Origin: Macrostomum lignano
Lineage: Eukaryota
NCBI GenBank assembly: GCA_002269645.1
Contig: NIVC01000861.1
Coordinates: 362,360 to 426,359 of the forward strand
Direction: 5' to 3'
DNA: 64,000 nt
In this document: positions 10,053 to 64,000 of the stretch, piece after piece
Position numbering within the stretch: position 1 is the first letter of the stretch
How the letters are laid out: each line of letters begins with the position of its first letter
Notes under the pieces: model-generated
The model's database searches: none
What the model was told of the DNA's origin: nothing
Seen by the model: only the letters and a program-made list of their open reading frames with translations
Position numbers and translations under genes: made by a program

Positions 10053-10465
10053 ACTAAAAGTAAAATAAAGTGGTAAAACTCTGCCTTCAAATGAAAAATT
10101 CTGGCTTTGTTTGATGCTGAGATATTAGAAAAGGATAATAATTATTATTATTCTACACAATTAAGCTAGGCTTGCAGATTATGTTTATTAAATACTAAAC
10201 ATTGTCGCCATAGGAGCAGAGTGAAGTATTTTGCAACATTTCAAAGCCAGTTTCAATTGCAATAGGAGTACATGAATGAAATAAAGTACTTTTTCAAGGA
10301 AAACATGCTGTCTGTTAAAAGTGCACTGGAAACAAGGAAACTTGTACAACTAGGAGTGCAAGACAAAACTGATTCAGCTGAAGAAACAAATAAAAAGAAA
10401 AAAAACAGAAAGAAACAGAAAATAACAGTCAAAAGTCGTCAAGGAAAAGCAATTTAATTACAAAT

Positions 10466-11640: not shown

Positions 11641-13774
11641 CGCGTATATTTGTAGCCGCTGTAGCAAGGTCCTCGAGGAGAGGGCGATGATCTGTGAGAG
11701 AGAGCAATATACTGTTCAAACATCAATGACAGAGAGCTTTCGACAATATGTAACTTATTAAAGCGTCAATAGTAAAGTTCAGATAAGTTTCAAATCGCAA
11801 AGGCTGGCATTGTAAAGAACTTTTACCCGGACACAATGACGAGTTAAAAGGGCAATTATTACGCCATTCAGCGACTCCACTGGCAGATTTTTCTAATTGA
11901 TAAGAGCAGTTACATGACTGAGCTTCATTTTTATGAATTTTTTCCTTTGTGATTCCATAAATGCATCGGCAATTTAATGACTAAAAAGACAATGAAATAA
12001 AAATGTCACAGCATAAATTCTGGCTACGCAACTTGATTTCTAAAATTAGTGATTTTTTAACGAAATCTTCCAATCAATTTGCTTTATTGTGTGTATTGTC
12101 TATGGTCAAGTGCAGTTCTGTAGCAGTAGACTGTTGTTGCAGCGAAATGGGGATTATCAAATTGACTGGCTATTTTATCAACATGACTGAAACAAACAAT
12201 TGTCTATGTCCAAGACCCTGGTCTGCGGTATATGGCAACTACAAGCGTAGTTTAGTCTATGGTCTATTACCTTGATTCTTGGTGTATGACGTTGGTCATT
12301 GAACGAACTAATGTTGTAGATCATTCGGTCTTTGACCTAAACTTTTGCTGTACATGTATATACACTCGTAATTTACATAGTTCGGCTGATGTATACTCGT
12401 ATTTTTGATGCTTTTTCATTCTTTTGTATGTAACGATATCTTGTACGTTTAAATCTACCTTTGCAATATCGTATGCAGAAACTATTTTTTTGCGGTCAAA
12501 ACCGATCCACGTATGATAAAAAGTAAATAAAGAACTTACCGCAAATTCTGCTGAAAGTTTATTCCCCCTTTCAGTGAATATTACAATATTAGCTTATAAT
12601 TTTTAATATATGGATATATGTTACCAATGGGTTATTTTGGTATAACCAATTTTTAGTTATCAAGCGACAGTCTCGATTCGGAGGCGAACTAGAAATTAGC
12701 TACCCACTCTCCTGTGCTGACGTTGAGTGGATCCGTCCGCCACTTGTGCTCAGTTATTTCGCCTGGTATATAATATCTTTATGTGCACAAAGTTCTCCAA
12801 TAGCCTCCCGGGGTATATTGTAAGACAGTAAGTCAGAGGAGCTAACAGCGCTTCCCTACTAACGCCCAAACTACCCTACCACCCAACCCTTCTCGATTGC
12901 CCTCCATATGTCTGTGCAGTTCAGTGCCTCAATTGCGAGCCAAAGAAGTCATGCGCTCCAATTTCAGTTCGTCCGTGCTTTTGCCGCCCAATGGGAACCG
13001 CCAATGGGATACGAGCGAGCAATTTCGAAATTGGCTTAGGCTGACTATAGCTGGGATAGGGACCTATCGACGACTCCATGTCATTTGACTGCCTTTTTTA
13101 TTTTTGACTGCTGAATTCGACAAAAATGCTGAATTCGACAGTTTGGTCACACAACTGCCGGGCCACACCCTAACATAGATTTTCTTACTACCACCACAAT
13201 TCTAACTCTAGTTTAAATCCTAATGCTTAATCAGTCAAGTTGGCAGTAAAATTTCAAATGCTCAGTAGTCCAATACTGTACTGGACTTACTTTTGAAATC
13301 AAGAATAGTGTAAACGCTAATGCCCTGTGTCAGGCAAGTTACTTTAAGCATAACGGTAGAGGTGGTAACCAAAGAATTCATGGTGAAACGATTCGTTGCT
13401 AGTTGCTTTGAAGATTTTTGAAGCCGGATCTGCCAACTGCCACTGGAATGATGCACCATGCCCTATATTCTCTTATTGTTGACTGCACTGTTAGCGTGAT
13501 GCCCCGCTGGTCATTTGATGCTGAATTTTGTTAATTAACCGCGTAATTATCCGCGTAATCTAATTAAATTGCGCACGTTTCATTGTGCACACTATTATTA
13601 CTTATAATTGCCCGCTTAAAGCCTACGCACGTTGTATACTAAATTTACTAATTTCTCACAGTGGTCTTCACGTAGAGCTCTGCACATGCCTTTCTCTCTA
13701 AATCTTGACATAAGTATTTAATGCATTAATTAGCTCAATACAATTTTAGTTTAACTTGCAATAGCGCAGAAATA

Positions 13775-15592
13775 ATGACAAAAAATGCGCTGATAATATA
13801 TGCGGCTCTGGCCGCACTGCTCAGCTGCTCTCACGCGTACAGAATGTTCCAGTCCCGAATACCGAACGGCGACCGGGTCCCGAATCCGTGCCAGCAAGGC
13901 GACATCTGGGTCGGACTCGGACACCAGAGTCCCGCCGGTGCTGACGCTATAAATCCCTTCGGCTTGGACTTCAAGGCCGCCAGCTTCAGCTGGACAATCG
14001 ACCTGTGCCGCAAGGACTCGGACGGCGACGGAATCACGAACGGCCAAGAGCTCGGAGACCCCGACTGCGTGTGGAAGGTCGGTGCGGCTCCGGCGCGAAC
14101 GACTGGACTGTCCCACCCTGGCATCTGCCCGCTCGACTCCGCGACGTGCAAGAACTCGTGGACCGTGTGTCCGAAGGCCTTCAGCTGTCCAGCATTCGAA
14201 GAGCCCGGTGTTTTCGTGAGAAACTTCACCCTCAAACCGACTCCCGTGCCCGCCACTGAGACGACATACGTCTGTCAGGCGTTCGAGCTGAACAACACTG
14301 CCTCTCCGGTTCACCTGATCGGATCGAGGCCGATCATCGACAACAAGAACGTCATGCACCACATGATTATGTACGCCTGCAGTGTCAAGCCAGAACAGAC
14401 GCTGTTCGATAATCCACGGCAGTGTTTAATGGGCCACAGAAACTGCACCCAGATGATGAACCTTTGGGCCTACGGACTCGAAGGCGAGTGCATCAATAGC
14501 AACGCGGGGTTCCGAATCGGCGGTGATGGCTTTCGGTACGGAGTTTTGCAGCTTCACTGGAACAACCCGGCGAGGCATTCAGGCTACACCGACGCTTCTG
14601 GCTTCGCTCTCTACTTTACACAAAACCTGCGACCATCCGACTTGGGAACTGTGATGTATGGCGAGGGAAATCTCGTTCTCCCACCGCGACAGCCGTTGAT
14701 CAGCGTGAACCACACGTGCCCTTCGGTGTGCACTAACCGGTACCACACTGAGACTCGCTACATCACAGGAGTAGGCATCTACATGCACACCAACGGTATT
14801 AGAGGACGCATTTCTCTCTGGAGGAATGAAACTTTAGTGAGGGACATCTGGCCGCTCCAGGAATACAGTTACAACTCTCCAAAAGTTATTTTCTTGAACC
14901 AAACGGTTGAGTATCAACCCGGAGATGAATTGAAAACAGAGTGCTACTTTACCACACTGAAGAATGACCGGACGGTATTTTCTGGAGCCGCTAAAAATGA
15001 CGAAATGTGCCTGTCATTTCTGTGGTTGTATCCAAATAAGGCCAGGGTTCCTGCGTCAGAGAGACTGACCCAGTGTATGGCTATAGCTGCAATCAACTTG
15101 TGCTGGGTTGCAAGCAACATAGTTCCGCATGTGGAACGAGACTGTAACATCACGTCGATGAGGAGTGGAGAAATGCCGAATCGAGTGATGTCGGAAATGG
15201 CCGCCAACAACTGCTTTGCTCGGACTGGATGCGATCCAGCTTGTCGAAACTACCTGAACTTCACTCTGTGGCCCTTAAATGCTTGCTACGACCCGACAAG
15301 GTCGAGACAGATGGCTGAAGCCATGGCTTTGGGCATGGTACCGTCATCTAATCACGAAACAATCGCCCGTACTCTGTATGGACAGCGCTTCTGCGAGCAG
15401 GAGATCAATTTGTTGAATGCTCCAGCTCCAACGAAACTCATCGAGGCGCTGCCGGCTGCGCCGATTCTCCAAAAAGGCGGGTTGACCTCCGAGCACCTGC
15501 TGATCATCATCGTTGTGTGCAGCTGCCTGGGGTTTGTTCTGTTTTTGGCTCTGCTAACCTATCTGTCAATCAGGCTCAACCACAGAAGCTAA
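13775..15592 (+). CDS. Temptin-domain copper type II monooxygenase (DBH/MOXD1-like), copy 1, membrane-anchored, 605 aa
   Basis: Signal peptide; temptin-like IPNGDRVPNPC...GHQ...NPFG.DF...DSDGDG.TNGQELGDPDCVW...SHPG; CuH HHM + LHWNN; CuM site YMH (His->Tyr) + DEMC; C-terminal hydrophobic LLIIIVVCSCLGFVLFLALLTYL. Confidence 0.92.
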   Translation: MTKNALIIYAALAALLSCSHAYRMFQSRIPNGDRVPNPCQQGDIWVGLGHQSPAGADAINPFGLDFKAASFSWTIDLCRKDSDGDGITNGQELGDPDCVWKVGAAPARTTGLSHPGICPLDSATCKNSWTVCPKAFSCPAFEEPGVFVRNFTLKPTPVPATETTYVCQAFELNNTASPVHLIGSRPIIDNKNVMHHMIMYACSVKPEQTLFDNPRQCLMGHRNCTQMMNLWAYGLEGECINSNAGFRIGGDGFRYGVLQLHWNNPARHSGYTDASGFALYFTQNLRPSDLGTVMYGEGNLVLPPRQPLISVNHTCPSVCTNRYHTETRYITGVGIYMHTNGIRGRISLWRNETLVRDIWPLQEYSYNSPKVIFLNQTVEYQPGDELKTECYFTTLKNDRTVFSGAAKNDEMCLSFLWLYPNKARVPASERLTQCMAIAAINLCWVASNIVPHVERDCNITSMRSGEMPNRVMSEMAANNCFARTGCDPACRNYLNFTLWPLNACYDPTRSRQMAEAMALGMVPSSNHETIARTLYGQRFCEQEINLLNAPAPTKLIEALPAAPILQKGGLTSEHLLIIIVVCSCLGFVLFLALLTYLSIRLNHRS

Positions 15593-18299
15593 ACTGCGAG
15601 ACGTGCTGACAATAGAGAATTCCATTAACGCAGAAGACGACTATACTGTATACTGACCAATGACTTTCCACCTCACGTCAAAAAAACATTTTTGCTAAAT
15701 CAATACAAAGTCGAAGACTTAAAGACTCAAATATTAACACTAATAAATATTTTACGGTGCGTTCCTTAATCTCTATTTGTAGCATTGTCATTCAAATTCA
15801 ATTTTAGTGCTTGTTCCTTTCGTGTGAAAAAACCAAACCATAAGTCAATTGCGACTGCACTGCCCAAATTAATAGCTTGAGAACAAATCTATCCGGTAGT
15901 TTTTACTAAATTTATGCAGCTTTTCTTGTGCTAATAATTTAAATATTCTTCACTATGTTTACTTCATTTTTCGCGAGTCTTCTATATAAATATAAATCAA
16001 AATTTTTCAGCAATAATAAGCTGTTTAGTTCACTTAGCTGGTAGTGACTATCTACAAGTACGTATATCGCCAAAAAGTAAGCCTAAGAGTACATTTTCTT
16101 GCAAATTCGATATAATTCGATATTAGTACGATGCGTGCTCTGTTTCCAATTCGGAAGTCTTGAAGATAAGATATTGTGAATTTTTAGTGCTAAACAGCTG
16201 AAAATTTATCTCGACGTTGCATTTAGAGAAAAAGCACCCCTGTTTTGTAGAGTGCATCCACAGTCGTAGTCCCCGATGCTTGATTAGCTGCTCTTCTATC
16301 TAGCAAATCAAACGACTGTGAAATATGGTCTGTACGAAATAGGGTCGAACTGGTAAAAATTTTACTCAATATTAAAGCACGAAAAAGAAGATTAGATCTG
16401 CGACTTTCATTTGTGGTTGCTGATGGAGTGGCGAGTGAAGGCTTACACACGAGCCTTACTACGAGTAAGTATATACGAGTCGTATATTATTGATAGATCC
16501 CTATCCCCGCTGTAGTCAATTCAACCCCAAGTTTAAAAAGCTTTTAAAGCAGGATACGCCATGATCGAAATCAAATCTAAATATACTAAAAAAATGAAAT
16601 TGCCTACTGATATTGTCAGCCTTATTGGCAAGGAACGCGCGTGGGGGCCAACTCAATTTGGTCAAACCAATTTTAACTAAAAGATGCACTGAGCAACACT
16701 CTAGCTCTTGAGCTGCACGGACAGAGATAGAGGGTTGGAGTTGGCTGGGCGCTTGGGAAAAGCTGTTAGGAAATACAAAAAATTGCAGGACGCCTTCGGT
16801 GATATCGTTTCATAATTTCTTCCTGAGGCAATTCCGCCCATTCGACTGCCCTTTGACTGTCTAATCGTCAGGCATGTACACTCTCTGAGCCTTGGGGGTT
16901 GGCCCTCACGGCTGTGAACCGCACAACAGCCCCAGATCAATGTGGGCGCACACGGAATCGAACAATGGGGTCGCGATAGTCATACCAGTCGATCCTCCTA
17001 GAGTGCACGAGAGCTCTCCGCGCATACGGATATCATAGACCGGACTCACAGAGACTGGCCTAAAACTCAACGTCAGTACAGTAGAGTGTAAGTGGATTTG
17101 TGTTGAGTACTATCCTGAATCGCATCTGTCGTATCTAAGTCGATTTAAGCTGTACGCTCGTATAAATCAGTGTGAATTTATGATATTGACCAATGATTTC
17201 GGTTATCACTAAACACGCATGTTATCAATGACGCGCTGAAAACACACACACAGGGACCACAAAGCAGTAAATGAGGGAACTTGGCCATGTGGCCATGGAC
17301 CAAATGATCTAGCAAAGGTCGATCAGATTACTCGTAGATCTTAAGCCAAAACATTAAGACAAATACAATTTAATGATGCAGAGCATTGATAAAAATGAGT
17401 CTAATGCCTAGTAATGAATAAAGCACCCGGCGCTATTACAAACCTTAAATGGGGAATTAAAAGAAGTAAAGTGCACCTGAAAAAAACAGTAGATATGCAT
17501 AATAATAACGTAGCTGCGTGCCAAACAGTACCTGAGTTGGCTTACGTACAGCTGGATCTACAGACGACTTGCTTTCGATTTGAAAGTCGACCCTCCTGGG
17601 TGAGGTCGGCTGCTCCAAAATCCTTAAACTGCTTTTGTACAGCAGCTGCATTGTCGCTGCATCTTCTGCCGTGTCCTCTCGTCCTCTGCCGTCATCAGAG
17701 TCGTCCGGATTTCGGATGTTTGCTTCCCAAATTGATAAGCCATCGCTATCAATCACACAACTCTGATGTAATAAAGCTAGCTCGATGGCGGTAGGAACGA
17801 ACACTTTAAGGCTGATTAGCATTACCGCTGAAAGCTCCGCAGGTCCAGGATTGCTCAAATCAATGTACAGTTGTTTACAAAAAGTTTAAATGTCTTTTCT
17901 GCCCCAATGCGCCGTCCATGCCCGATCCCAACCAGCGATACCCGATACTCAGGTCCCCCCCGATGACTCATTCCCTACCCACCCCAACCTCCGCGCTATT
18001 GTCCAAATTCACCCAAGCAAAATGCACCTAGTGACCTCCCATCTCTGCCGGCCTACAGCCCATAGTTTAAGGAAATGCATGGATTGTTCATCTGCAAATT
18101 GTCTGTGGCCCCAACCCAAGCTAAAACCAATAACTTTGAAACGAGGAAAGTATTTATAGACTCACTCAGCCAATGCAATTGAAGCGGGGGACTACCCAAG
18201 ATGGGGGGAGACATTTCCCAGATGAGCAAATCCATGATATTACTTCATCCATGTTCCAGTGCGTGATTACCATCGTTGATGACCGCGGCATTTAATTTG

Positions 18300-21200: not shown

Positions 21201-22123
21201 GCATCTAAGCAGTGCTAGTTTTGTGATCAATACAGGAGAAGAACAACAAATTGGCGATGTAGCAACGATTAAAGGGCTACTGATGAGCAGATAATCACTA
21301 ATTATACTTTGAACCATGCGGCTCTGCCCAGACAACCATTGTTGACCATAGCATAACTAGGTTGTGGTAATAACTCAAAACAGAGGTTTCCTATATGTAT
21401 GAGCTGTATTTTCTTATGAAGTGTCAAACAATTTTCCGACTTTAGGAATTTTTCAGCATTTTCATAAAAACTGGGGGCAAAATGCAATGCAGACAAAATC
21501 CGCGTGAAGCTAACTGCACTGCAGTAAAAATTAAAGTATTGCGGGAAACTCTCGGGGGGGGGGCAACTTCAGTGCTCCTCCTTCCTAGAGCGAGTCGCTC
21601 AGTGCACTCTTACGTCTTCAGGACTGCTCAATGTAATTTCAACTAGTCCAAGGCTTACTTGGATGCGATAAATGTTGTGAGAATATAAAGCATACATTCG
21701 TCAGCGTTACAACTAATATGTTACAAACTGAAAACATTGATTTCTTGAATCTTGGCAATGGGCTTACATGTAATCTCGATTGCTTGCAAATTTTTGTAGG
21801 AATTCTGTTTGAAACTTTCGTAGGAGCCAGGCCTGCGAGAAATACCTTTCTGTCTTGGAAGGAGAAAGAATAGTACTATAGTTTAAGTGTAATGCCTAAT
21901 CATAAAACTAATATTTATTGAAACATTCCATCAAATTTCAGACAAAGAAACAAGCTAATGTTATTTGAAAAGTTAAATACTCCACAAGGCAAACATTAAC
22001 CAGTCAAATGTTTTATAAACCGCAACCAAAAAGTAACACTTGGTTCGACTGCACGGACCAATGACTTAGTGTCAGTTTTTCAACTTGAATTTCACAACTA
22101 TTTGCAAGGCAGGTGTTCGGAGG

Positions 22124-23809
22124 TTAGGCGATGGTATTTGCCTGAGCTGGAGCAGCCTGTCGGTTCATCTCTGCCAGCATTTTGATCTCCTGCTCGCAAA
22201 ATCTCTGACCGAACAGAGTAGCCGAGATGGCCTGAGTCACTGCAGCATTGAGCTGAAAGACACCCAGAGCCAACACTTCGGCCATTTGACGCGAACGCTT
22301 CGGGTCGTAGCAGGCATTGTTGGGCCAGAGAGTGTTCTCCAGGTAGTTGCGGCACAGCGGGTCGCAGCCGGTCCGAGAGAAGCACTTGTTGGCGGCCATT
22401 TCAGAATAAACTCGTTTCGGCATGTCACCGTTTCGCATGGCGGTGATGTTGCAACCCCTCTCAACTTGGGGAGTGATGCCGCTCTCCACCCAGCACCGGT
22501 TGATTCCAGATTCAGCGACACAGTGTCCGAGCTTGTCATGGTTACTTTGGGCTACATTGTTCGGATAATAGTATATCAAAGCGAAACACATTTCATCTCT
22601 GGCGCCTTCTCCAAGGAAGATGGTAACATTGCTTTTTAGTGTGCTGTAGTAGCATTCGGTCTTTACTTCGTCACCTTTCCGGTATTCGATCGGTGGGTCG
22701 AAAGTGTGCACCTTCGGGGATTTGAAATCGTACACTTGAAGAGGAGACAGGTCTTTAATCATAGTTCCGTTTCTCCACAGCGAGATGCGTCCTTTAATGC
22801 CATAAGCGTGCATGTGAATGAGTACGGCGGTGATGTAGCGAGTCTCATTGTGGTACCAGTTAGTGCACACCGAAGGGCACGTGTGGTTCACGCTGATCAA
22901 CGGCTGTCGCGGTGGAAGAACAAGATTTATCTCGCCATACATAAGAGTTCCCAAGTCGTATGGTCGAAGGTTTTGTGCAAAGTAAAGAGCGAAGCCAGAA
23001 GCATCTGTGTAGTTAGAAATCCTCATCGGGTTGTTCCAGTGAAGCTGCAAAACTCCGTACCGAATACCCTCACCGCCAAATCGGAATCCCGCATTGCTAT
23101 TGATGCACTCGCCTTCGAGTCCGTAGGTCCAGAGGTTCATCAACTCAGTGCAGTTTCCAATGGGCATGAAACACGGTTGTGAATTATTAAAAAGCGTCTC
23201 TGCGGGCTTGACACTACAGACATACATAATCATGTGGTGCATGATGCTCTTGTTGTCAATGATTGGCCTCGATCCGATCAGGTGAACCGGAGAGGCAGTG
23301 TTGTTCAGCTCGAACGCCTGACAGATGTACGTTGTCTCTCTCGCAGGCACGGGAGTCGGTTTGAGGGTGAAGTTTCTCACGAAAACACCGGGCTCTTCGA
23401 ATGCTGGACAGCTGAAGGCCTTCGGACACACGGTCCACGAGTTCTTGCACGTCGCGGAGTCGAGCGGGCAGATGCCAGGGTGGGACAGTCCAGTCGTTCT
23501 CGACGGAGCCGCACCGACCTTCCACACGCAGTCGGGGTCTCCGAGCTCTTGGCCGTTCGTGAGTCCGTCGCCATCCGAGTCCTTGCGGCACAGGTCGACC
23601 GTCCACTGGAGCCCGGCCGCCTTGAAGTCCAAGCCGAAGGGGTTTCTCGCGTTAGCGCCGGCGGGACTCTGGTGTCCGACTCCGGCCCAGATGGCGCCTG
23701 GCTGGCACGGATTCGGGACGCGATCGCCGTTCGGGATTCGGGACTGGAAAATTTTGTGTGCGTGAGAGCAGCTGAGCAGTGCGGCCAGAGCCACAGAAAG
23801 CAGCAGCAT
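22124..23809 (-). CDS. Temptin-domain copper type II monooxygenase, copy 2, no C-terminal anchor (predicted secreted), 561 aa
   Basis: Intact single ORF with signal peptide, temptin domain, HHM, LHWNN, HMH, DEMC. Confidence 0.93.
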   Translation of the reverse strand: MLLLSVALAALLSCSHAHKIFQSRIPNGDRVPNPCQPGAIWAGVGHQSPAGANARNPFGLDFKAAGLQWTVDLCRKDSDGDGLTNGQELGDPDCVWKVGAAPSRTTGLSHPGICPLDSATCKNSWTVCPKAFSCPAFEEPGVFVRNFTLKPTPVPARETTYICQAFELNNTASPVHLIGSRPIIDNKSIMHHMIMYVCSVKPAETLFNNSQPCFMPIGNCTELMNLWTYGLEGECINSNAGFRFGGEGIRYGVLQLHWNNPMRISNYTDASGFALYFAQNLRPYDLGTLMYGEINLVLPPRQPLISVNHTCPSVCTNWYHNETRYITAVLIHMHAYGIKGRISLWRNGTMIKDLSPLQVYDFKSPKVHTFDPPIEYRKGDEVKTECYYSTLKSNVTIFLGEGARDEMCFALIYYYPNNVAQSNHDKLGHCVAESGINRCWVESGITPQVERGCNITAMRNGDMPKRVYSEMAANKCFSRTGCDPLCRNYLENTLWPNNACYDPKRSRQMAEVLALGVFQLNAAVTQAISATLFGQRFCEQEIKMLAEMNRQAAPAQANTIA

Positions 23810-29004: not shown

Positions 29005-29880
29005 AGTCCAGGACTTTGAAGCCATCCTGGAGGCTGATGAGGACACAAACACCATCTTGAAGGACACGAGGACACGAAGCCCATCCTGGAAGCTGATGAG
29101 GATACGAAGCCCATCCTGAAGGCTGATGAGGACGCGAGGACACGAAGCCCATCCTGGAAGCTGATGAGGATACGAAGCCCATCCTGGAGGCTGATGAGGA
29201 TACGAAGCCCATCCTGGAAGCTGATGAGGATACGAGGACATGAAGGAGGACACGAAGCCTATACTGGAGGCTGATGAGGACACGAAGCCCATCCTGGAGG
29301 CTGATGAGGACACGAAGCCCATCCTGAAGGCTGATGAGGACACGAAGCCTATTCTGGAAGCTGATGAGGACACGAAGCCTATTCTGGAAGCTGATGACAA
29401 CACGAAGCCTATTCTGGAAGCTGATGACAACACGAAGCCTATTCTGGAGGCTGATGAGGACACGAAGCCTATTCTGGAGGCTGATGAGGACACGAAGTCC
29501 ATCCTGGAGGCTGATGAGGACACGAAGCATATCCTGGAGGCTGATTAGGACACGAGGATATGAAGGTGAACACGAAGCCTATACTGGAGGCTGATGAGGA
29601 CACGAAGCCTATCCTGTAGGCTGATGAGGACACGAGGATATGAAGGTGGACACGAAGCCTATACTGGAGGTTGATGAGGACACGAAGCCCATCCTGGAGG
29701 CTGATGAGGACACGAAGCCCACCCTGGAGGCCGATAAGGACACGAAGCATATCCTGGAGGCTCATGAGGACACGAGGACATGAAGGAGGACACGAAGCCT
29801 ATACTGGAGGCTGATGAGGACACGAAGCCCATCCTGGAGGCTGATGAGGACACGAAGCCCATTTTGGAGGCTGATGAGGG
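29005..29880. repeat. 30-bp minisatellite (translates as KPILEADEDT repeats, with stops)
   Basis: Unit gctgatgaggacacgaagcccatcctggag with recurring spacer variants. Confidence 0.92.
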
Positions 29881-38530: not shown

Positions 38531-38817
38531 AGGAATTCTAGCGTGAATTCTCGTTGGCAAGGCTGAAATACTCAACTAGTTAAAGTGTTATGCCCGACAC
38601 AAAAAAAAATTTATAAAACAATTTATTCAATTTTACACAAGATCCAAGCTAACCTTTAAAAAGTAAGATACTCCCCCACCAGTTAAGCGTAAACCAGTCA
38701 AATGTTTTATAAACCGCAACCAAAAAGTAACACTTGGTTCGACTGCACGGACCAATGACTTAGTGTCAGTTTTTCAACTTGAATTTCACAACTATTTGCA
38801 AGGCAGGTGTTCGGAGG

Positions 38818-40503
38818 TTAGGCGATGGTATTTGCCTGAGCTGGAGCAGCCTGTCGGTTCATCTCTGCCAGCATTTTGATCTCCTGCTCGCAAAATCTCT
38901 GACCGAACAGAGTAGCCGAGATGGCCTGAGTCACTGCCGCATTGAGCTGAAAGACACCCAGAGCCAACACTTCGGCCATTTGACGCGAACGCTTCGGGTC
39001 GTAGCAGGCATTGTTGGGCCAGAGAGTGTTCTCCAGGTAGTTGCGGCACAGCGGGTCGCAGCCGGTCCGAGAGAAGCACTTGTTGGCGGCCATTTCAGAA
39101 TAAACTCGTTTCGGCATGTCACCGTTTCGCATGGCGGTGATGTTGCAACCCCTCTCAACTTGGGGAGTGATGCCGCTCTCCACCCAGCACTGGTTGATTC
39201 CAGACACTGCGACACAGTGTCCGAGCTTGTCATGGTTAGTTTGGGCTACATTGTTCGGATAGTAGTATACAAATGCGGCGCACATTTCATCTCTGGCGCT
39301 TTCCCCAAGGAAGATGGTAACGTTGGTTTTTAGTGTGCTGTAGTAGCATTCGGTCTTTACTTCGTCACCTTTCCGGTATTCAATCGGTGGGTCGAACTTT
39401 TGCAACTTCGGAGATTTGAAATCGTATACTTGAAGAGGAGACAGGTCTTTAATCATAGTTCCGTTTCTCCACAACGAGATGCGTCCTTTAATGCCATAGG
39501 TGTGCATGTGAATGAATGCTGCGGTGATGTAGCGAGTCTCAGTGTGATACCGGTTCGTGCACACCGAAGGGCACGTGTGGTTCACGCTGATCAACGGCTG
39601 TCGCGGTGGAAGAACGAGATTTATCTCGCCATACATAAGAGTTCCCAAGTCGTATGGTCGCAGGTTTTGTGTAAAGTAAAGAGCAAAGCCAGAAGCGTCG
39701 GTGTAGCCTGAATGTTTCATCGGGTTGTTCCAGTGAAGCTGCAAAACTCCGTACCGAAGGCCATCACCGCCGATTCGGAACCCCGCGTTGCTGTTGATGC
39801 ACTCACCTTCAAGTCCGTAGGCCCAGAGGTTTAGCAACTCAGTGCAGTTTCCACTCGGAAACAATTGACACTTTTGTGGACTATTGAAAAGTGTCTCTGC
39901 GGGTTTTGCAGTACAGGCATACATAATCATGTGGTGCATGACCTTGTTGTCAATGATTGGCCTCGATCCGATCAGGTGAACCGGAGAGGCAGTGTTGTTC
40001 AACTCGAACGCCTGACAGATGTACGTTGTCTCTCTCGCAGGCACGGGAGTCGGTTTGAGGGTGAAGTTCCTGACGGTCACGTTGACACTGTCAAGTGCTG
40101 GACAGCTGAAGGCCTTCGGACACACGGTCCACGAGTTCTTGCACGTCGCGGAGTCGAGCGGGCAGATGCCAGGGTGGGACAGTCCAGTCGTTCTCGCCGG
40201 AGCTGCTCCGACCTTCCACACGCAGTCGGGGTCTCCGAGCTCTTGGCCGTTCGTGAGTCCGTCGCCGTCTGAGTCCTTGCGGCACAGGTCGATCGTCCAC
40301 TGGAGCCCGGCCGCCTTGAAGTCCAAGCCGAAGGGGTTTCTCGCGTTAGCGCCGGCGGGACTCTGGTGACCGACTCCGGCCCAGATGGCGCCTGGCTGGC
40401 ACGGATTCGGGACGCGATCGCCGTTCGGGATTCGGGACTGGAAAATTTTGTGTGCGTGAGAGCAGCTGAGCAGTGTGGCCAGAGCCACAGGAAGCAGCAG
40501 CAT
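38818..40503 (-). CDS. Temptin-domain copper type II monooxygenase, copy 3, predicted secreted, 561 aa
   Basis: Intact ORF with all six Cu ligands. Confidence 0.93.
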   Translation of the reverse strand: MLLLPVALATLLSCSHAHKIFQSRIPNGDRVPNPCQPGAIWAGVGHQSPAGANARNPFGLDFKAAGLQWTIDLCRKDSDGDGLTNGQELGDPDCVWKVGAAPARTTGLSHPGICPLDSATCKNSWTVCPKAFSCPALDSVNVTVRNFTLKPTPVPARETTYICQAFELNNTASPVHLIGSRPIIDNKVMHHMIMYACTAKPAETLFNSPQKCQLFPSGNCTELLNLWAYGLEGECINSNAGFRIGGDGLRYGVLQLHWNNPMKHSGYTDASGFALYFTQNLRPYDLGTLMYGEINLVLPPRQPLISVNHTCPSVCTNRYHTETRYITAAFIHMHTYGIKGRISLWRNGTMIKDLSPLQVYDFKSPKLQKFDPPIEYRKGDEVKTECYYSTLKTNVTIFLGESARDEMCAAFVYYYPNNVAQTNHDKLGHCVAVSGINQCWVESGITPQVERGCNITAMRNGDMPKRVYSEMAANKCFSRTGCDPLCRNYLENTLWPNNACYDPKRSRQMAEVLALGVFQLNAAVTQAISATLFGQRFCEQEIKMLAEMNRQAAPAQANTIA

Positions 40504-46462: not shown

Positions 46463-48148
46463 TTAGGCGATGGTATTTGTCTGAGCTGGAGCAGCCGGTC
46501 GGTCCATCTCTGCCAGCATTTTGATCTCCTGCTCGCAAAATCTCTGACCGAACAGAGTAGCCGAGATGGCCTGAGTCACTGCCGCATTGAGCTGAAAGAC
46601 ACCCAGAGCCAACACTTCGGCCATTTGACGCGAACGCTTCGGGTCGTAGCAGGCATTGTTGGGCCAGAGAGTGTTCTCCAGGTAGTTGCGGCACAGCGGG
46701 TCGCAGCCTGTCCGAGAGAAGCACTTGTTGGCGGCCATTTCAGAATAAACTCGTTTCGACATGTCACCGTTTCGCATGGCGGTGATGTTGCAACCCCTCT
46801 CGATCTGAGGAGTGATGCCGCTCTCCACCCAGCACCGGTTGATTCCAGATACAGCGACACAGTGTCCGAGCTTGTCATGGTTAGTTTGGGCTACATTGTT
46901 CGGATAGTAGTATACAAATGCGAAGCACATTTCATCTCTGGTGCCTTTGCCATAGAAGATTGAAACGTTGGTTTTTAGTGTGCTGTAGTAGCATTCGGTC
47001 TTTACTTCGTCACCTTTCCGGTATTCGATCGGTGGGTCGAAAGCGTGAATCTCCGGAGAGTTATAATCGTACACTTGAAGAGGAGACAGGTCTTTAATCA
47101 TAGTTCCGTTTCTCCACAACGAGATGCGTCCTTTAATGCCATAAGCGTGCATGTGGATGAGTACGGCGGTGATGTAGCGAGTCTCATTGTGGTACCGGTT
47201 CGTGCACACCGAAGGGCAGGTGTGGTTCACGCTGATCAACGGCTGTCGCGGTGGGAGAACGAGATTTATCTCGCCATACATAAGAGTTCCCATGTCGTAT
47301 GGTCGAAGGTTTTGTGCAAAGTAAAGAGCAAAGCCAGATGCATCGGTGTAGCCTGAATGTTTCATCGGGTTGTTCCAGTGAAGCTGCAAAACTCCGTACC
47401 GAAGGCCATCACCGCCGATTCGGAACCCCGCGTTGCTGTTGATGCACTCACCTTCAAGTCCGTAGGCCCAGACGTTCATCAACTCGGTGCAGTTTTCAAT
47501 GAGCATTAAACACGGTTGTGGACTGTTGAAAAGTGTCTCTGCGGGTTTTGCAGTGCAGGCATACATAATCATGTGGTGCATGACGTTTTTGTTGTCAATG
47601 ATCGGCCTCGATCCGAGCAGGTGAACCGGAGAGGCAGTGTTGTTCAACTCGAACGCCTGACAGGATTAGGTGGTCTCAGTGGCGGGCACGGCAGTCGGTT
47701 TAAGGGTGAAGTTCCTGACGGTCACGTTGACACTGTCAAGTGCTGGACAGCTGAAGGCCTTCGGACACACGGTCCACGAGTTCTTGCACGTCGCGGAGTC
47801 GAGCGGGCAGATGCCAGGGTGGGACAGTCCAGTCGTTCTCGCCGGAGCTGCACCTACCTTCCACACGCAGTCGGGGTCTCCGAGCTCTTGGCCGTTCGTG
47901 AGTCCGTCGCCGTCCGAGTCCTTGCGGCACAGGTCGACCGTCCACTGGAGCCCGGCCGCCTTGAAGTCCATGCCGAATGGGTTTCTGGCGTTAGCGCCGG
48001 CGGGACTCTGGTGTCCGACTCCGGCCCAGATGGCGCCTGGCTGGCACGGGTTCGGGACGCGGTCGCCGTTCGGGATTCGGGACTGGAAAATTTTGTGCGC
48101 GTGAGAGCAGCTGAGCAGTGCAGCCAGAGCCACAGGAAGCAGCAGCAT
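46463..48148 (-). pseudogene. Temptin-domain copper monooxygenase, copy 4, with in-frame TAA at 47666-47668
   Basis: Both ORF pieces are in the same frame; paralogous TAC ATC reads TAA TCC here. Otherwise intact with all Cu ligands. Could be a consensus error. Confidence 0.8.
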
Positions 48149-55635: not shown

Positions 55636-57561
55636 TCAGCCACTCGCTTCATTGTCGTACACTTTATAGACGCTCGACTTGTCCGGAGCGCCCTGCTGTC
55701 CGCTGCTGAGCCCGGCAGCCGAGCTCGCACCCTTCAACTTGATTGACAGAAAGATTAGCAGAGCCAGAATCAGAATGAACCCCAGGCAGCTGCACACAAC
55801 GATGATGATCAGCAGGTGCTCCGAGCTCAGGCCGCCCTTCTGCGACGTTGGAGTAGCGGGGGGCCTAGCGGTGGTTGTTGTACGATCTGGAGCAGCCGGT
55901 CGGTCCATCTCTGCCAGCATTTTGATCTCCTGCTCGCAAAATCGCTGACCGAACAGAGTAGACGATATGGCCAGAGTAACAGCTGAATTGAGCTGAAATA
56001 AACCCAGAGCCAACACTTCGGCCATTTGACGCGAGCGCTTCGGGTCGTAGCAGGCATTGTTGGGCCAGAGAGTGTTCTCCAGGTAGTTGCGGCACAGCGG
56101 GTCGCAGCCCGTTCGAGAGAAGCACTTGTTGGCGGCCATTTCAGAATAAACTCGGTTTGGGATTTCACCGTTTCGCATCGCGGTGATGTTGCAACCCCTC
56201 TCGATTTGAGGAGTGATGCGGCTCCGCAACCAACACGAATTGATGCCCGACACACCGATGCAGCGTCCGAGCTTATCGTCGGTGCTCACGGAGACATCGT
56301 TAGGATAATAATATAGAAATGAAAGGCACATCTCGTCGCTAGTACCTTCGCCAAAGAAGATAGTAACGTTGGTTTTTTGTGTGTTAAAATAACATTCGGT
56401 CTTTACTTCGTCACCTTTCCGGTATTCGATCGGTGGGTCGAAAGCATGAATCTCCGGTGAGTTGTAATCGTACACTTGAAGAGGAGACAGGTCTTTAATC
56501 ATAGTTCCGTTTCTCCACAACGAGATGCGTCCTTTAATGCCATAGGTGTGCATGTGGATAGTTGCCCCGGTGATGTAGCGAGTCTCATTGTGGTACCGGT
56601 TCGTGCACACCGAAGGGCAGGTGTGGTTCACGCTGATCAACGGCTGTCGCGGTGGGAGAACGAGATTTCCCTCGCCATACATCACAGTTCCCAAGTCGTA
56701 TGGTCGCAGGTTTTGTGTAAAGTAAAGAGCAAAGCCAGAAGCGTCGGTGTAGCCTGAATGCCTCGCCGGGTTGTTCCAGTGAAGCTGCAAAACTCCGTAC
56801 CGAAAGCCATCACCGCCGATTCGGAACCCCGCGTTGCTGTTGAAGCACTCACCTTTGACTCCGTAACCCCAGAGGTTCAACATCTCGGTGCAGTTTCCAA
56901 GAGCCATGAAACACTGTTTTGGATTATCGAACAGCGTCTGTTCTGGCTTGACACTGCAGGCGTACATAATCATGTGGTGCATGACGTTCTTGTTGTCGAT
57001 GATCGGCCTCGATCCGATCAGGTGAACCGGAGAGGCTGTGTTGTTCAGCTCGAACGCCTGACAGATGTAGGTGGTCTCATTGGCGGGCACGGGAGTCGGT
57101 TTGAGGGTGAGGTTTCTCATGGTCACGTTGGCACCGTCCAGTGCTGGACAGCTGAAGGCCTTCGGACACACGGTCCACGAGTTCTTGCACGTCGCGGAGT
57201 CGAGCGGGCAGATGCCAGGGTGGGACAGTCCAGTCGTTCGCGCTGGAGCCGCACCGACCTTCCACACGCAGTCGGGGTCTCCGAGCTCTTGGCCGTTCGT
57301 GAGTCCGTCGCCGTCCGAGTCCTTGCGGCACAGGTCGACCGTCCACTGGAGCCCGGCCGCCTTGAAGTCCATGCCGAATGGGTTTCTGGCGTTAGCGCCG
57401 GCGGGACTCTGGTGTCCGACTCCGGCCCAGATGGCGCCTGGCTGGCACGGGTTCGGGACGCGGTCGCCGTTCGGGATTCGGGACTGGAACGACTTGTGCG
57501 CGTGAGAGCAGCTGAGCAGTGCAGCCAGAGCCACAGAAAGCAGCAGCATAGTCGTTTTCAT
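55636..57561 (-). CDS. Temptin-domain copper type II monooxygenase, copy 5, membrane-anchored, 641 aa
   Basis: Intact ORF, all Cu ligands, Thr/Pro linker, TM LLIIIVVCSCLGFILILALLIFL and a short cytosolic tail. Confidence 0.93.
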   Translation of the reverse strand: MKTTMLLLSVALAALLSCSHAHKSFQSRIPNGDRVPNPCQPGAIWAGVGHQSPAGANARNPFGMDFKAAGLQWTVDLCRKDSDGDGLTNGQELGDPDCVWKVGAAPARTTGLSHPGICPLDSATCKNSWTVCPKAFSCPALDGANVTMRNLTLKPTPVPANETTYICQAFELNNTASPVHLIGSRPIIDNKNVMHHMIMYACSVKPEQTLFDNPKQCFMALGNCTEMLNLWGYGVKGECFNSNAGFRIGGDGFRYGVLQLHWNNPARHSGYTDASGFALYFTQNLRPYDLGTVMYGEGNLVLPPRQPLISVNHTCPSVCTNRYHNETRYITGATIHMHTYGIKGRISLWRNGTMIKDLSPLQVYDYNSPEIHAFDPPIEYRKGDEVKTECYFNTQKTNVTIFFGEGTSDEMCLSFLYYYPNDVSVSTDDKLGRCIGVSGINSCWLRSRITPQIERGCNITAMRNGEIPNRVYSEMAANKCFSRTGCDPLCRNYLENTLWPNNACYDPKRSRQMAEVLALGLFQLNSAVTLAISSTLFGQRFCEQEIKMLAEMDRPAAPDRTTTTARPPATPTSQKGGLSSEHLLIIIVVCSCLGFILILALLIFLSIKLKGASSAAGLSSGQQGAPDKSSVYKVYDNEASG

Positions 57562-62401: not shown

Positions 62402-64000
62402 ATGAAACTTGGAATCAGCTTAATAGCGACTGCAGCCGTTGTGCTGCAGACTGTACACGGCTACTCAAGTTTCAAGTCGAGGATACCCAACGGAGATCGC
62501 GTCCCGAACCCGTGCCAGGTGGGCACCATCTGGGCCGGAGTGGGGCACGAGAGTGCGGTTGGAGCCGACACTCGCAACAAGTTCGGTTTAGACTTCAAGG
62601 CGGCCGGGCTCCAGTGGACGGTCGACCTGTGCCGCAAGGACTCGGACGGCGACGGACTCACGAACGGCCAAGAGCTCGGAGACCCCGACTGCGTGTGGAA
62701 GGTCGGAGCCACTCCGGCGCGTACGACTGGACTGTCCCACCCTGGAATTTGCGAGTTCGGCTCCACAAAATGCAGCAACGCGTGGAACGTGTGCCCAAAA
62801 GCATTCAGCTGTCCAGCCATGAATGACCCCAGTGTGACCGTGAGAAACTTCACCATCAACAAGAACACCCCGGTTCCAGCGAAGGAAACCACGTATGTCT
62901 GTCAGGCGTTCGAGCTGAACAACACCGCCACGCCTGTTCACCTGATCGGATCAAAGCCAATCATTGACAACAAGAACGTCATGCACCACATGATCATGTA
63001 CGCCTGCTCTTCGAAGCCGAATCAGACGTTTTTCGACGCCCCGCAGGAGTGCTTTATGGCCCGCTCGGACTGCAATGAGATAGTCAATCTGTGGGCATTC
63101 GGGCTCGAGGGCGAGTGCTATAACAACAACACCGGCTATCGCATCGGAGGCGAGGGCTATCGCTACGCAATGCTGGAGCTCCACTGGAACAATCCGGCTA
63201 AGCTCAGTACATATACAGACTCATCTGGCTTGGCGCTCTACTTCACCCCCAACCTGAGAAAATACGACCAGGGCACTGCAATGTACGGCGAAGGCAATCT
63301 CGTGCTTCCGCCGCGTCAGCCAGTGGTTAATTTTAACCACACTTGCCCGTCGGTGTGCACGGAGAAGTACCACACGGAGACGCGCTACATCACCGGAGCC
63401 GGCATCCACATGCACGGCTACGGAGTGCAGGGCCGCATCTCGCTATGGCGAAATGGAACTCTCGTCAAGGATTTGCATCCGCTGCAGGCCTACGATTACA
63501 ACTCGCCTAAAATGAACATGTTCGATCCGCCAATCGAATACCGCAGAGGTGACGAAGTTAAAACTGAATGCTACTTCAGCACTCTAAAGTCCAATAAAAC
63601 AATTTACTTCGGCGAAGGAACTAGTGACGAAATGTGCCTGTCGTTTCTGTCCTATTATCCCAACAATGTCAGCAAGCCGAATTCTGAAAAGCTGGGCAGC
63701 TGCATCGCCGTCTCCGGAATCAGTGCTGGGTGCAGAGCGCATCGAGCCTCACATAGAGCGGGAATGCAACATCACAGACATGCGAAACGGCAACCTCACT
63801 GAACAGGTATCAGCCGAAATGACAGCCAATGGATGCTTTCTCCAAGACCGGCTGCAATCCAAAATGCCGTGACTATCTCAACAACACCCTGTGGCGCGTC
63901 GAACGCCTGCCTACGATCCGAAGCGAGCGCTTCAGATGACCGAGACAATGGCCACGGGATATCTGATAAATCAGTCACGCAAGCCGACCTTTATTAAGAC
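62402..64000 (+). CDS. Temptin-domain copper type II monooxygenase, copy 6 (most divergent); indels after ~63720; runs off window
   Basis: MKLGISLIATAAVVLQTVHG signal peptide, temptin domain, HHM, LHWNN, HMH, DEMC. Homologous sequence continues in shifted frames (IEPHIERECNITDMRNG; KTGCNPKCRDYLNNTLW; YDPKR). Confidence 0.85.

What the first reader, a model, noticed from the sequence alone, without database searches (positions are those of the whole stretch)
22090..22126. Fossil membrane anchor just past the stop of the secreted copies
Copies 1 and 5 end with ..GGL(T/S)SEHLLIIIVVCSCLGF.. (TM). Copies 2-4 stop at ..NTIA*, but a shifted frame overlapping the stop reads cta acc tcc gaa cac ctg (LTSEHL) then ata gtt gtg, matching acc tcc gag cac ctg ... 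atc gtt gtg in copy 1. Inference: the secreted lineage arose by a frameshift that shed the anchor and was then amplified, giving soluble and tethered forms from separate genes.
Basis: partly seen in the sequence, partly recalled or inferred. Interest (0 to 1): 0.7.

Follow-up and report, generated by a model that had tools for sequence, protein, structure and literature searches.

The report
Relic membrane anchor behind secreted enzyme genes
In a flatworm (Macrostomum lignano) cluster of copper-monooxygenase genes, three copies lost their membrane anchor through one 37-base frameshifting deletion, and decayed remains of the anchor-coding DNA still lie just past their stop codon; this is a real, tidy but ordinary case of a known way to turn a tethered protein into a soluble one.

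Summary
The window is Macrostomum lignano contig NIVC01000861.1. It holds six intronless temptin/DBH-like copper monooxygenase genes.

- **Gene forms.** Copies 1, 5 and 6 and every other Macrostomum paralogue have a C-terminal transmembrane (TM) helix. Copies 2-4 end at ..NTIA*.
- **The lesion.** Copies 2-4, and a second contig's copy 2, lack the same 37 nt of the linker.
- **The stop.** The shifted frame stops at once at TAA. This codon is homologous to an out-of-frame TGA inside the Leu-Thr/Ser codons of all anchored paralogues.
- **The relic.** Downstream lie collinear remains: LTSEHL codons (17/21 nt to copy 5), a gap of about 48 nt where the TM core was, then the end of the TM plus IKLK (an exact 10-mer). 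Shuffle tests give z = 5-11, 0/1000.
- **History.** The secreted copies form one clade (100% bootstrap), sister to copy 5. Their dN/dS is 0.15-0.33, their frames are preserved and their copper ligands are intact. This indicates one anchor loss, then amplification under constraint.
- **Not shown.** Expression and secretion are untested. Copy 4 carries an internal stop.
- **Precedent.** A 13-nt frameshift deletion makes MOXD2 soluble in cercopithecine monkeys. This is a new member of a known kind.

The parts
22124..23809 (-). Copy 2: 561-codon intact ORF with signal peptide, Temptin_C, Cu2_monooxygen and Cu2_monoox_C domains and no TM helix. This is the predicted soluble form.
   Evidence: Translation; Pfam; hydropathy finds no window >=1.6 outside the signal peptide; the copper-ligand motifs HH, H, HxH and M align to DBH 4zel.
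22127..22132 (-). Deletion junction (ATC|GCC). 37 nt present in copies 1 and 5 and in P0001 are missing here. Placement is ambiguous by a 2-nt GC microhomology.
   Evidence: E-INS-i alignment; affine-gap global alignments; in copy 5 the missing segment is 55831-55867.
22124..22126 (-). Stop codon TAA of copy 2. It is homologous to the +1-frame TGA inside cTG Agc / tTG Acc / tTG Aag (Leu-Ser/Thr/Lys) of the anchored paralogues.
   Evidence: The same TGA ends the 577-aa product of the frameshifted copy-5 allele in L004.
22109..22129 (-). Relic block 1: GCCTAACCTCCGAACACCTGC, the remains of G-L-T-S-E-H-L codons just before the TM helix. It matches copy 5 at 17/21 nt, and 15/16 of its core matches copy 1. 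It keeps the ancestral Thr codon ACC.
22079..22108 (-). Relic block 2: CTTGCAAATAGTTGTGAAATTCAAGTTGAA, the remains of the last TM codons and the stop-transfer residues (..LLIFLSIKLK). It follows a gap of about 48 nt where the TM core (LLIIIVVCSCLGFILI) was lost.
   Evidence: collinear shuffle test 0/1000.
22003..22020 (-). Possible relic block 3: GTTTATAAAACATTTGAC against copy 5 GTCTATAAAGTGTACGAC (VYKVYD of the cytoplasmic tail). This block is weak on its own.
   Evidence: It is placed consistently by the aligners but was not tested separately.
21914..21919 (-). AATAAA, 205 nt behind the stop of copy 2. It is a candidate polyadenylation signal; the same motif lies behind copies 3 and 4.
   Evidence: sequence only.
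38818..40503 (-). Copy 3: 561-codon intact ORF, soluble form. Its relic at 38773-38823 is identical to that of copy 2.
46463..48148 (-). Copy 4: soluble-form gene with an internal stop at 47648-47650 (TAC ATC changed to TAA TCC). Relic block 1 lies at 46448-46468, and the rest of the relic is more decayed.
13775..15592 (+). Copy 1: 605-aa anchored form. LTSEHL is at 15482-15499 and the TM helix at 15497-15565, followed by a short 9-aa tail.
55636..57561 (-). Copy 5: 641-aa anchored form and closest relative of the soluble clade. The 37-nt segment is at 55831-55867 (C6 run 55858-55863), LSSEHL at 55813-55830, the TM helix at 55747-55815, and the tail with VYKVYDNE at 55639-55746.
62402..64000 (+). 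Copy 6 (equals P0004): an anchored paralogue cut by the contig end. It served as the outgroup.

Best explanation
The window is a tandem cluster of intronless temptin/DBH-like copper monooxygenase genes in the flatworm Macrostomum lignano.

**Ancestral form.** The ancestral protein is a type I membrane protein. It has a signal peptide, a temptin domain and the two copper-monooxygenase domains on the lumenal or extracellular side. A Pro/Thr/Ala-rich linker follows, then one TM helix (LLIIIVVCSCLGF...) and a cytoplasmic tail with a conserved Tyr motif.

**The event.** After the lineage of copies 2-4 split from that of copy 5, a 37-nt deletion in the linker shifted the frame by one base. The new frame ran straight into an out-of-frame TGA that sits in the Leu-Thr/Ser codons immediately before the TM helix in every paralogue. 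That TGA is now TAA.

**The product.** The result is a complete ectodomain with a short new end (..AQ(A/T)NTIA). It has no anchor and no tail, so it should be released into the secretory pathway as a soluble enzyme.

**Decay of the relic.** The now untranslated anchor DNA became 3' UTR or flank and decayed roughly neutrally. It is about 80% identical to copy 5, as the synonymous distance predicts. It also lost about 48 nt of the TM core by further deletion.

**Amplification.** The truncated gene was then duplicated to at least three copies, with some gene conversion. These copies stayed under purifying selection.

**Shown versus inferred.** Shown: homology of the relic, the shared lesion, the polarity of change, single origin, and constraint on the coding region. 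Inferred: that the 37-nt deletion was the first event, and that the products are expressed and secreted.
For: **Identity of the locus.** Copy 1 is found exactly on GCA_002269645.1 NIVC01000861.1. Pfam finds Temptin_C, Cu2_monooxygen and Cu2_monoox_C in all copies. The copper-ligand motifs align to human DBH.

**Anchor ancestral.** All other Macrostomum paralogues, and the more distant hit P0009, have the TM helix and tail.

**Shared lesion.** The 37-nt gap and the stop at the homologous TGA/TAA are shared by copies 2, 3 and 4 and by L001 copy 2.

**Relic significant.** 6 hits against 0.40 expected. Collinear alignment gives z = 4.4-11, 0/1000 shuffles.

**Single origin.** NJ tree (c6,(c1,((c5,P0001),(c2,L1c2,c3,c4)))), soluble clade at 100% bootstrap.

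**Constraint.** dN/dS within the soluble clade is 0.15-0.33, Fisher p < 1e-6. The CDS has 0-4 frame-preserving gap events per 1686 nt, against 5-14 per 250 nt in the 3' flank.

**Topology.** Signal peptide present and no other hydrophobic segment.

**No rescue.** No TM-coding sequence lies elsewhere in the window or within 4 kb downstream. The relic has stops in all three frames.

**Same exit point.** The L004 allele of copy 5, with one C fewer in the C6 run, is annotated as a 577-aa protein ending at this very TGA.

**Precedent.** A 13-nt frameshift deletion turns GPI-anchored MOXD2 into a soluble form (PMC4125168).
Against: **No expression evidence.** There is no transcript or protein evidence.
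- Copies 2 and 3 are not gene models in the deposited annotation.
- Only a 136-aa model sits on the L001 counterpart.
- No protein more than 85% identical to the soluble form exists in the 5.8-billion-protein collection.

**Copy 4 is interrupted.** It has an in-frame stop.

**Gene conversion could inflate apparent constraint.** Conversion between paralogues is evident: there is a c1-c2 tract, and c2 and c3 have identical 3' ends. This could mimic purifying selection to some degree.

**Order of events is not resolved.** The sequence does not show whether the 37-nt deletion or another lesion came first.

**The assembly has small indel errors**. Single-base features, including the copy-4 stop and the L004 frameshift, are therefore unreliable.
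Confidence: 0.85

Rival explanations
1. Copies 2-4 are dying or dead duplicates. On this view the frameshift was the first disabling hit and no soluble enzyme is made.
For: Copies 2 and 3 are not annotated as genes. There are no close relatives in protein databases. Copy 4 has an internal stop. Gene conversion from functional neighbours could keep the ORFs looking healthy.
Against: Three independent 561-codon ORFs (c2, c3, L001 c2) are intact despite dS of 0.07-0.16 between them (c2-L1c2 0.074, c2-c3 0.138, c3-L1c2 0.159). dN/dS is 0.15-0.33 with p < 1e-6. Indels are roughly 20 times rarer in the CDS than in the adjacent flank and never break the frame. The copper ligands and all domains are intact. 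The truncation falls in the linker, not in a folded domain.
Confidence: 0.12
2. The anchor was first lost by another lesion, such as a 1-nt slip in the linker (as in the L004 allele) or a nonsense change. On this view the 37-nt gap arose later, in sequence that was already untranslated or dispensable.
For: The +1 frame of the whole linker is open down to the same TGA, so any -1 shift upstream gives the same stop. The relic shows that further deletions did occur after the loss.
Against: This needs two events where one suffices. The 37-nt gap ends 0-2 nt before GCC TAA and lies inside what is still coding sequence, so a secondary in-frame 36-nt deletion plus a 1-nt shift would have to be combined. 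All four soluble copies share exactly the same gap.
Confidence: 0.1
3. The similarity behind the stop is a chance match in GC-rich DNA.
For: Block 1 is short. The 'ata gtt gtg' sub-match is not significant alone and is absent from copy 4. Copy 4 against copy 5 is only marginal.
Against: There are 6 hits against 0.40 expected, at homologous positions. 0 of 1000 shuffles reach the collinear score in four schemes. The match starts exactly where in-frame homology ends. Identity (about 80%) equals the neutral expectation from dS of 0.21-0.29.
Confidence: 0.01
4. The truncation is an assembly artefact, or it is bypassed by splicing, readthrough or programmed frameshifting, so the real product is anchored.
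For: This PacBio-era assembly has many 1-nt indel errors. The L004 frameshift of copy 5 is probably one of them.
Against: The lesion is 37 nt and is seen in four diverged copies on two contigs. About 48 nt of the TM core are missing from the relic and all frames contain stops, so no anchor can be decoded. There is no TM exon elsewhere. The anchored paralogues are single-exon.
Confidence: 0.02

Closest known systems
MOXD2 of Old World cercopithecine monkeys (13-nt frameshift deletion in the last exon; PMC4125168)
   Same: It belongs to the same enzyme superfamily (DBH-like copper monooxygenase). It has the same type of lesion: a short deletion, not a multiple of three, just upstream of the membrane-attachment signal. 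It has the same consequence: a premature stop that converts a membrane-bound protein into a soluble one, with the old coding sequence left behind the stop.
   Different: In MOXD2 a GPI signal is lost from a single-copy orthologue. Here a type I TM helix plus cytoplasmic tail is lost from one duplicate while anchored paralogues persist next door, and the soluble form was then amplified to at least three copies. The N-terminal domain is temptin, not DOMON.
Temptin/mono-oxygenase hybrid gene of Lophotrochozoa (Aplysia 'DBH-like protein', Pomatoceros, Lottia; PMC2762978)
   Same: The domain order is the same: temptin, then Cu2_monooxygen, then Cu2_monoox_C. The closest hits outside Macrostomum are mollusc proteins of this type at 36-46% identity.
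   Different: Most mollusc members end in a hydrophobic stretch at the very C-terminus, which looks like a GPI signal. The Macrostomum genes use a TM helix with a cytoplasmic tail, or, in copies 2-4, nothing.
Soluble and membrane forms of DBH and PAM (from my own knowledge, and for DBH)
   Same: Enzymes of this family work in the lumen of secretory vesicles both as tethered and as soluble, co-secreted forms.
   Different: In vertebrates the two forms come from one gene, by signal-peptide retention, alternative splicing or proteolysis. Here they would come from separate genes fixed by a genomic deletion.
Soluble members of membrane-receptor gene clusters made by truncation, e.g. LILRA3 (from my own knowledge, not tested here)
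   Same: A tandem family in which one paralogue lost its TM helix and tail and is secreted.
   Different: An unrelated protein family, with a different lesion.

Membership tests
Copper type II ascorbate-dependent monooxygenases (PHM/DBH/TBH/MOXD) | Cu2_monooxygen (PF01082) and Cu2_monoox_C (PF03712) domains | tested here: met
   Both domains score above the gathering threshold in copies 1, 2 and 5. phmmer to DBH 4zel gives E = 8e-27, and to PHM structures about 1e-14.
Copper type II ascorbate-dependent monooxygenases (PHM/DBH/TBH/MOXD) | Copper ligands: HH...H (CuH site) and HxH...M (CuM site) | tested here: met
   In the 4zel alignment, copy 2 has mHHm / lHwnnp / HmH / dEMc opposite DBH vHHm / vHyhnp / HtH / eEMc. 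Assignment of these motifs as the ligands is from established PHM/DBH knowledge.
Copper type II ascorbate-dependent monooxygenases (PHM/DBH/TBH/MOXD) | N-terminal DOMON domain (DBH/MOXD subgroup) | tested here: not met
   Pfam finds Temptin_C at residues 16-113 and no DOMON domain. The genes therefore belong to the temptin-hybrid subgroup, not to DBH/MOXD proper.
Copper type II ascorbate-dependent monooxygenases (PHM/DBH/TBH/MOXD) | Ascorbate- and copper-dependent hydroxylase activity | not testable with these tools
   This needs an enzyme assay, and the substrate is unknown.
Temptin/mono-oxygenase hybrid (lophotrochozoan) | Temptin domain fused N-terminally to the two monooxygenase domains, in a lophotrochozoan | tested here: met
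   domain order; Macrostomum lignano, Platyhelminthes; family description in PMC2762978.
Anchor loss by frameshift deletion (MOXD2-cercopithecine type) | A deletion, not a multiple of three, just upstream of the anchor, with a premature stop before it | tested here: met
   A 37-nt gap followed by TAA 3 nt later, in c2, c3, c4 and L001 c2.
Anchor loss by frameshift deletion (MOXD2-cercopithecine type) | Recognisable out-of-frame remains of the anchor-coding sequence behind the stop | tested here: met
   (z = 4.4-11, 0/1000 shuffles for c2 and L001 c2; weaker for c4).
Anchor loss by frameshift deletion (MOXD2-cercopithecine type) | The anchored state is ancestral | tested here: met
   The outgroups c1, c6/P0004, P0003, P0005, P0006 and P0009 are all anchored. 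The tree places the soluble clade inside the anchored ones.
Anchor loss by frameshift deletion (MOXD2-cercopithecine type) | The product is soluble or secreted | not testable with these tools
   This is only predicted: signal peptide present and no hydrophobic segment.
Pseudogene | Disrupted ORF and relaxed constraint (dN/dS near 1, frame-breaking indels) | tested here: not met
   c2, c3 and L001 c2 are intact, with dN/dS of 0.15-0.33 and no frame-breaking indels. For c4 the test is inconclusive: it has one internal stop, which may be an assembly error.

The most novel reading that the evidence does not exclude
The boundary between ectodomain and anchor may be pre-adapted as a 'shedding switch'. 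Every paralogue keeps an out-of-frame TGA in the Leu-Thr/Ser codons right before the TM helix, and the +1 frame of the preceding linker is open. Any -1 shift in the linker therefore yields a clean soluble enzyme. The 37-nt deletion used this exit once. The C6-to-C5 difference in the L004 allele of copy 5 would be a second, independent and possibly segregating (or slippage-generated) use of the same exit. If so, soluble/tethered switching would be recurrent in this family rather than a one-off accident.
Probability: 0.07. Interest if true: 0.55.

Novelty: new member of a known kind. Interest (0 to 1): 0.3.

Why it matters
It documents, base by base, how a tethered secretory-pathway enzyme became a soluble one, and how that version was kept and amplified beside its anchored parent. 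That gives Macrostomum lignano, a transgenic model flatworm, a natural pair of matched soluble and membrane paralogues of the little-studied temptin/monooxygenase family. The pair could be used to ask what tethering does for these enzymes.

It also flags three unannotated, probably functional genes, and several assembly-error frameshifts in the public genome. It does not reveal a new mechanism.

Tried and rejected
1. **Default MAFFT and L-INS-i alignments of the 3' ends** did not open the 37-nt gap and smeared the relic. E-INS-i and the affine-gap global alignments did recover it.
2. **Alternative placement of the flank.** 'CGTGCAG..GTTAC-TTTTTGG' was tried on the TM core of copy 1 (GTGCAGCTGCC..GTTCTGTTTTTGG). 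I rejected it because it matches only the outgroup copy 1, is T-rich, and breaks collinearity with the TCAAGTTGAA block.
3. **A relic of the long cytoplasmic tail behind the stop of copy 1** (..CTATACTGTATACTGACCAATGA against VYKVYDNE). The test was not significant (z = -1.1 to 1.6), so I do not claim it.
4. **Exact look-ups of copy 2 and 3 proteins in public assemblies** found nothing. A homologue search with copy 2 found no soluble-type relatives.
5. **Literature searches** for Macrostomum plus temptin or monooxygenase found nothing.
6. **ORF 540-1793** looked like a duplicate of the LicD-like ORF. It is only a 21-nt minisatellite.
7. **The antisense ORF 22085-22639 (+)** over the finding is a by-product of the copy 2 coding strand.
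Full report
**What the window is**

Copy 1's protein is found exactly on Macrostomum lignano assembly GCA_002269645.1, contig NIVC01000861.1. The window corresponds to record positions 362,360-426,359, which is the end of that contig.

The window holds six paralogous single-ORF genes:

| Copy | Coordinates | Strand | Length | Form |
|---|---|---|---|---|
| c1 | 13775-15592 | + | 605 aa | anchored, short tail |
| c2 | 22124-23809 | - | 561 aa | no anchor |
| c3 | 38818-40503 | - | 561 aa | no anchor |
| c4 | 46463-48148 | - | 561 codons | no anchor, one internal stop |
| c5 | 55636-57561 | - | 641 aa | anchored, long tail |
| c6 | from 62402 | + | cut by contig end | anchored (by P0004) |

The three copies scanned against Pfam (c1, c2, c5) each have Temptin_C, Cu2_monooxygen and Cu2_monoox_C; the other three are close paralogues with the same layout. 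This is the temptin/mono-oxygenase hybrid described as specific to Lophotrochozoa (PMC2762978).

Copy 2 aligns to human dopamine beta-hydroxylase (4zel, E = 8e-27). The HH, H, HxH and M copper-ligand motifs are all in place.

The annotated coding ranges of c1, P0001 and P0004 equal their protein lengths. The genes are therefore intronless, and the anchor is encoded in the same exon as the enzyme.

**Check of the observation**

The minus strand at 22126-22090 reads TAA CCTCCGAACACCTGCCTTGCAAATAGTTGTGAAA.
- Copies 2-4 end ..NTIA*.
- Copies 1 and 5 read ..GGL(T/S)SEHLLIIIVVCSCLGF...
- The frame that overlaps the stop reads RLTSEHLPCK*.

**Is it more than chance?**

- The 16-mer ACCTCCGAGCACCTGC with up to 3 mismatches occurs 6 times in the window against 0.40 expected. 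Five of these are the homologous sites of copies 1-5.
- An unconstrained local alignment of the copy-2 flank to copy 1 is reached by 2-4 of 2000 shuffles.
- The stronger test uses collinearity. I aligned the 119-127 nt from the last in-frame codon to the GAC of 'TTTGAC' in copy 2 or its L001 counterpart. The target was the linker, TM and tail coding DNA of copy 5 or P0001, with affine gaps and free ends. The score exceeded all 1000 dinucleotide shuffles under four scoring schemes, z = 4.4-11.
- Copy 4 is more decayed: z runs from -0.6 to 4.1, positive in three of the four schemes.
- The more distant copy 1 gives weak values over the whole stretch.

**Anatomy of the relic**

1. In-frame homology runs to ..ACC ATC. 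This corresponds to PAQ(A/T)NTIA in the soluble copies, PDRTTTTAR in c5 and PAPTKLIEA in c1.
2. Then 37 nt are missing that are present in c1, c5 and P0001. In c5 this is TAGGCCCCCCGCTACTCCAACGTCGCAGAAGGGCGGC, 55831-55867. A 2-nt GC microhomology lies at the junction.
3. Block 1 follows: GCC TAA CCTCCGAACACCTGC (22129-22109). It matches c5 GCC TGA GCTCGGAGCACCTGC at 17/21.
4. The stop TAA is homologous to a +1-frame TGA. That TGA lies inside cTG Agc (c5, P0001), tTG Acc (c1) and tTG Aag (c6), so it is present in every anchored paralogue read.
5. The relic keeps ACC (Thr), as in c1, P0003, P0005 and P0006. The sister lineage c5/P0001 has since changed this codon to AGC (Ser).
6. A gap of about 48 nt removes the TM core.
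7. Block 2 follows (22108-22079): CTTGCAAATAGTTGTGAAATTCAAGTTGAA, matching c5 CTCTGCTAATCTTTCTGTCAATCAAGTTGAA. These are the last TM codons plus IKLK, and the match includes an exact 10-mer.
8. A weaker stretch ends in GTTTATAAAACATTTGAC (22020-22003), matching c5 GTCTATAAAGTGTACGAC (VYKVYD).

It is not conserved in copy 4. The relic has stops in all three frames.

**Polarity and number of events**

Every other Macrostomum paralogue has the L(T/S/K)SEHLL-IIIIVCSCLGF helix and a tail with a conserved Tyr motif. This holds for P0001, P0003, P0004, P0005 and P0006. The more distant hit P0009 (38% identical, organism unknown) also has a C-terminal TM helix, with a different sequence.

A neighbour-joining tree on 544 codons gives (c6,(c1,((c5,P0001),(c2,L001-c2,c3,c4)))), with 100% bootstrap for the soluble clade. 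All four soluble copies share the identical 37-nt gap and stop. This indicates one loss on the stem of that clade, followed by duplication.

Synonymous distances fit this order: c5 to the soluble copies 0.21-0.29, and within the soluble clade 0.07-0.18. The roughly 80% identity of the relic to c5 is what neutral decay over that distance predicts.

**Are the soluble copies alive?**

- c2, c3 and the L001 counterpart are intact 561-codon ORFs.
- dN/dS within the clade is 0.15-0.33, with Fisher p < 1e-6.
- Pairwise CDS alignments show 0-4 frame-preserving gap events in 1686 nt. The first 250 nt of the 3' flank show 5-14.
- The truncation lies in the linker, behind the last conserved Cys-rich segment.
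- The signal peptide is kept, and no other hydrophobic window reaches 1.6.
- An AATAAA lies 205 nt behind the stop.

Against this:
- c2 and c3 are not gene models in the deposited annotation.
- The L001 counterpart carries only a 136-aa model.
- No soluble-type relative exists in the protein collection.
- c4 has TAC ATC changed to TAA TCC at codon 167.
- Gene conversion is active in the cluster and could flatter dN/dS. CDS nt 360-450 of c2 is 100% identical to c1, and c2 and c3 are identical from about nt 1380 to about 190 nt past the stop.

**No rescue of the anchor**

- tblastn with the TM helix and tail finds them only in c1 and c5.
- Within 4 kb downstream, c2 has no hydrophobic 19-mer. 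The few in c3 and c4 are unrelated to each other.
- The anchored paralogues are single-exon.

**A cautionary parallel**

Contig NIVC01000757.1 (L004) is 99.8% identical to the right end of the window, and many of its differences are 1-nt indels. Its copy 5 has C5 instead of C6 in the linker and is annotated as a 577-aa protein..ARPPLLQRRRRAA*. That product ends at the very TGA discussed above, with intact TM-coding DNA behind it.

This shows that any -1 shift in the linker exits at that codon. The difference itself is most likely an assembly error. The same applies to the indel-only differences in the last 280 nt of the window, which break copy 6.

**Comparison with what is known**

The closest precedent is in the same superfamily. 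[quoted passage not shown]

DBH and PAM also exist as tethered and soluble forms, but from one gene (for DBH; my own knowledge for PAM). Here the anchor is a TM helix with a tail, the loss happened in a duplicate, and the soluble version was amplified.

Mollusc members of the hybrid family mostly end in a C-terminal hydrophobic stretch. This suggests GPI anchoring, so tethering is common in the family (inference).

**Verdict**

The case is a well-resolved new example of a known evolutionary route, not a new mechanism. Interest is modest (0.3).

Noticed in passing
L004:3426-5159 (-) against window 55858-55863: The near-identical allele or haplotig of copy 5 has C5 instead of C6 in the linker. 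It is annotated as a 577-aa protein ending ..PPLLQRRRRAA* at the same off-frame TGA that became the stop of copies 2-4, with intact TM coding behind it. It is probably a homopolymer assembly error, but it could be a real variant.
   Followed up: partly
window 63722-64000: The last ~280 nt of the window (the contig end) differ from L004 and L005 at 8 alignment positions (5 indel events), with no substitutions. The apparent frameshift of copy 6 against P0004 is therefore an end-of-contig artefact.
   Followed up: yes
window 47648-47650 (-): Copy 4 has an in-frame stop: TAC ATC has become TAA TCC at codon 167. The pattern looks like a 1-nt deletion plus a 1-nt insertion three bases on. It is either a real pseudogenising change or a consensus error.
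   Followed up: partly
window ~23360-23450 (copy 2) and the matching part of copy 1 (~14135-14225): A tract of about 90 nt (..CPAFEEPGVFVRNF..) is 100% identical between copy 1 and copy 2, and also in L001 copy 2. It is only about 82% identical to copies 3 and 4. This is gene conversion between oppositely oriented neighbours.
   Followed up: partly
window ~21935-22430 against ~38629-39124: Copies 2 and 3 are identical from about CDS nt 1380 to about 190 nt past the stop, although they differ by about 6% elsewhere. Further downstream, copy 2 resembles its L001 counterpart and copy 4 instead. This looks like a recent conversion of the 3' end, relic included.
   Followed up: partly
window 15566-15592 and 15593-15700 (+): Copy 1 has a short 9-residue tail (SIRLNHRS*, after the TM helix) instead of the 35-50-residue tail with the Tyr motif. 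A suggestive local match (CTATACTGTATACTGACCAATGA against c5 VYKVYDNE codons) lies behind its stop, but it was not significant in shuffle tests.
   Followed up: yes
L003:10001-11923: P0001 is a dispersed copy-5-like gene, 97% nt identical over the CDS, among unrelated genes (LRAT-like, DUF1907, RPS4). Its signal peptide differs and resembles that of P0006, which suggests a chimeric 5' end.
   Followed up: no
window 23740-23760 (-), and all copies: A likely signal-peptide cleavage site ..CSHA|HK.. (judged by eye, not run through a predictor) would leave a histidine as the first residue of the mature temptin domain. Whether this His binds copper was not examined.
   Followed up: no
window 506-1788, 2533-2853, 6404-7448, 9177-10052, 29018-29879, 61140-61356: There are large minisatellites with units of 21/63, 24, 21, 20, 30 and 21 nt. 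Several create long spurious ORFs, for example 540-1793, 6351-7495 and 9115-10090.
   Followed up: partly
window 7489-7977 (-), 10466-11719 (-), 60368-60964 (-): Other genes lie in the window: a PHO4 phosphate-transporter exon, a LicD-family ORF, and a THAP-domain ORF between copies 5 and 6. ORFs of the same lengths and spacing lie at the corresponding place in L004 and L005.
   Followed up: partly
P0007-P0120 (mollusc, brachiopod and bryozoan homologues): Most homologues outside flatworms end in a hydrophobic stretch 0-7 residues from the C-terminus, which looks like a GPI signal. Macrostomum uses a TM helix plus tail instead. 41 of the 120 listed proteins have a C-terminal 19-mer with KD >= 1.9.
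   Followed up: partly
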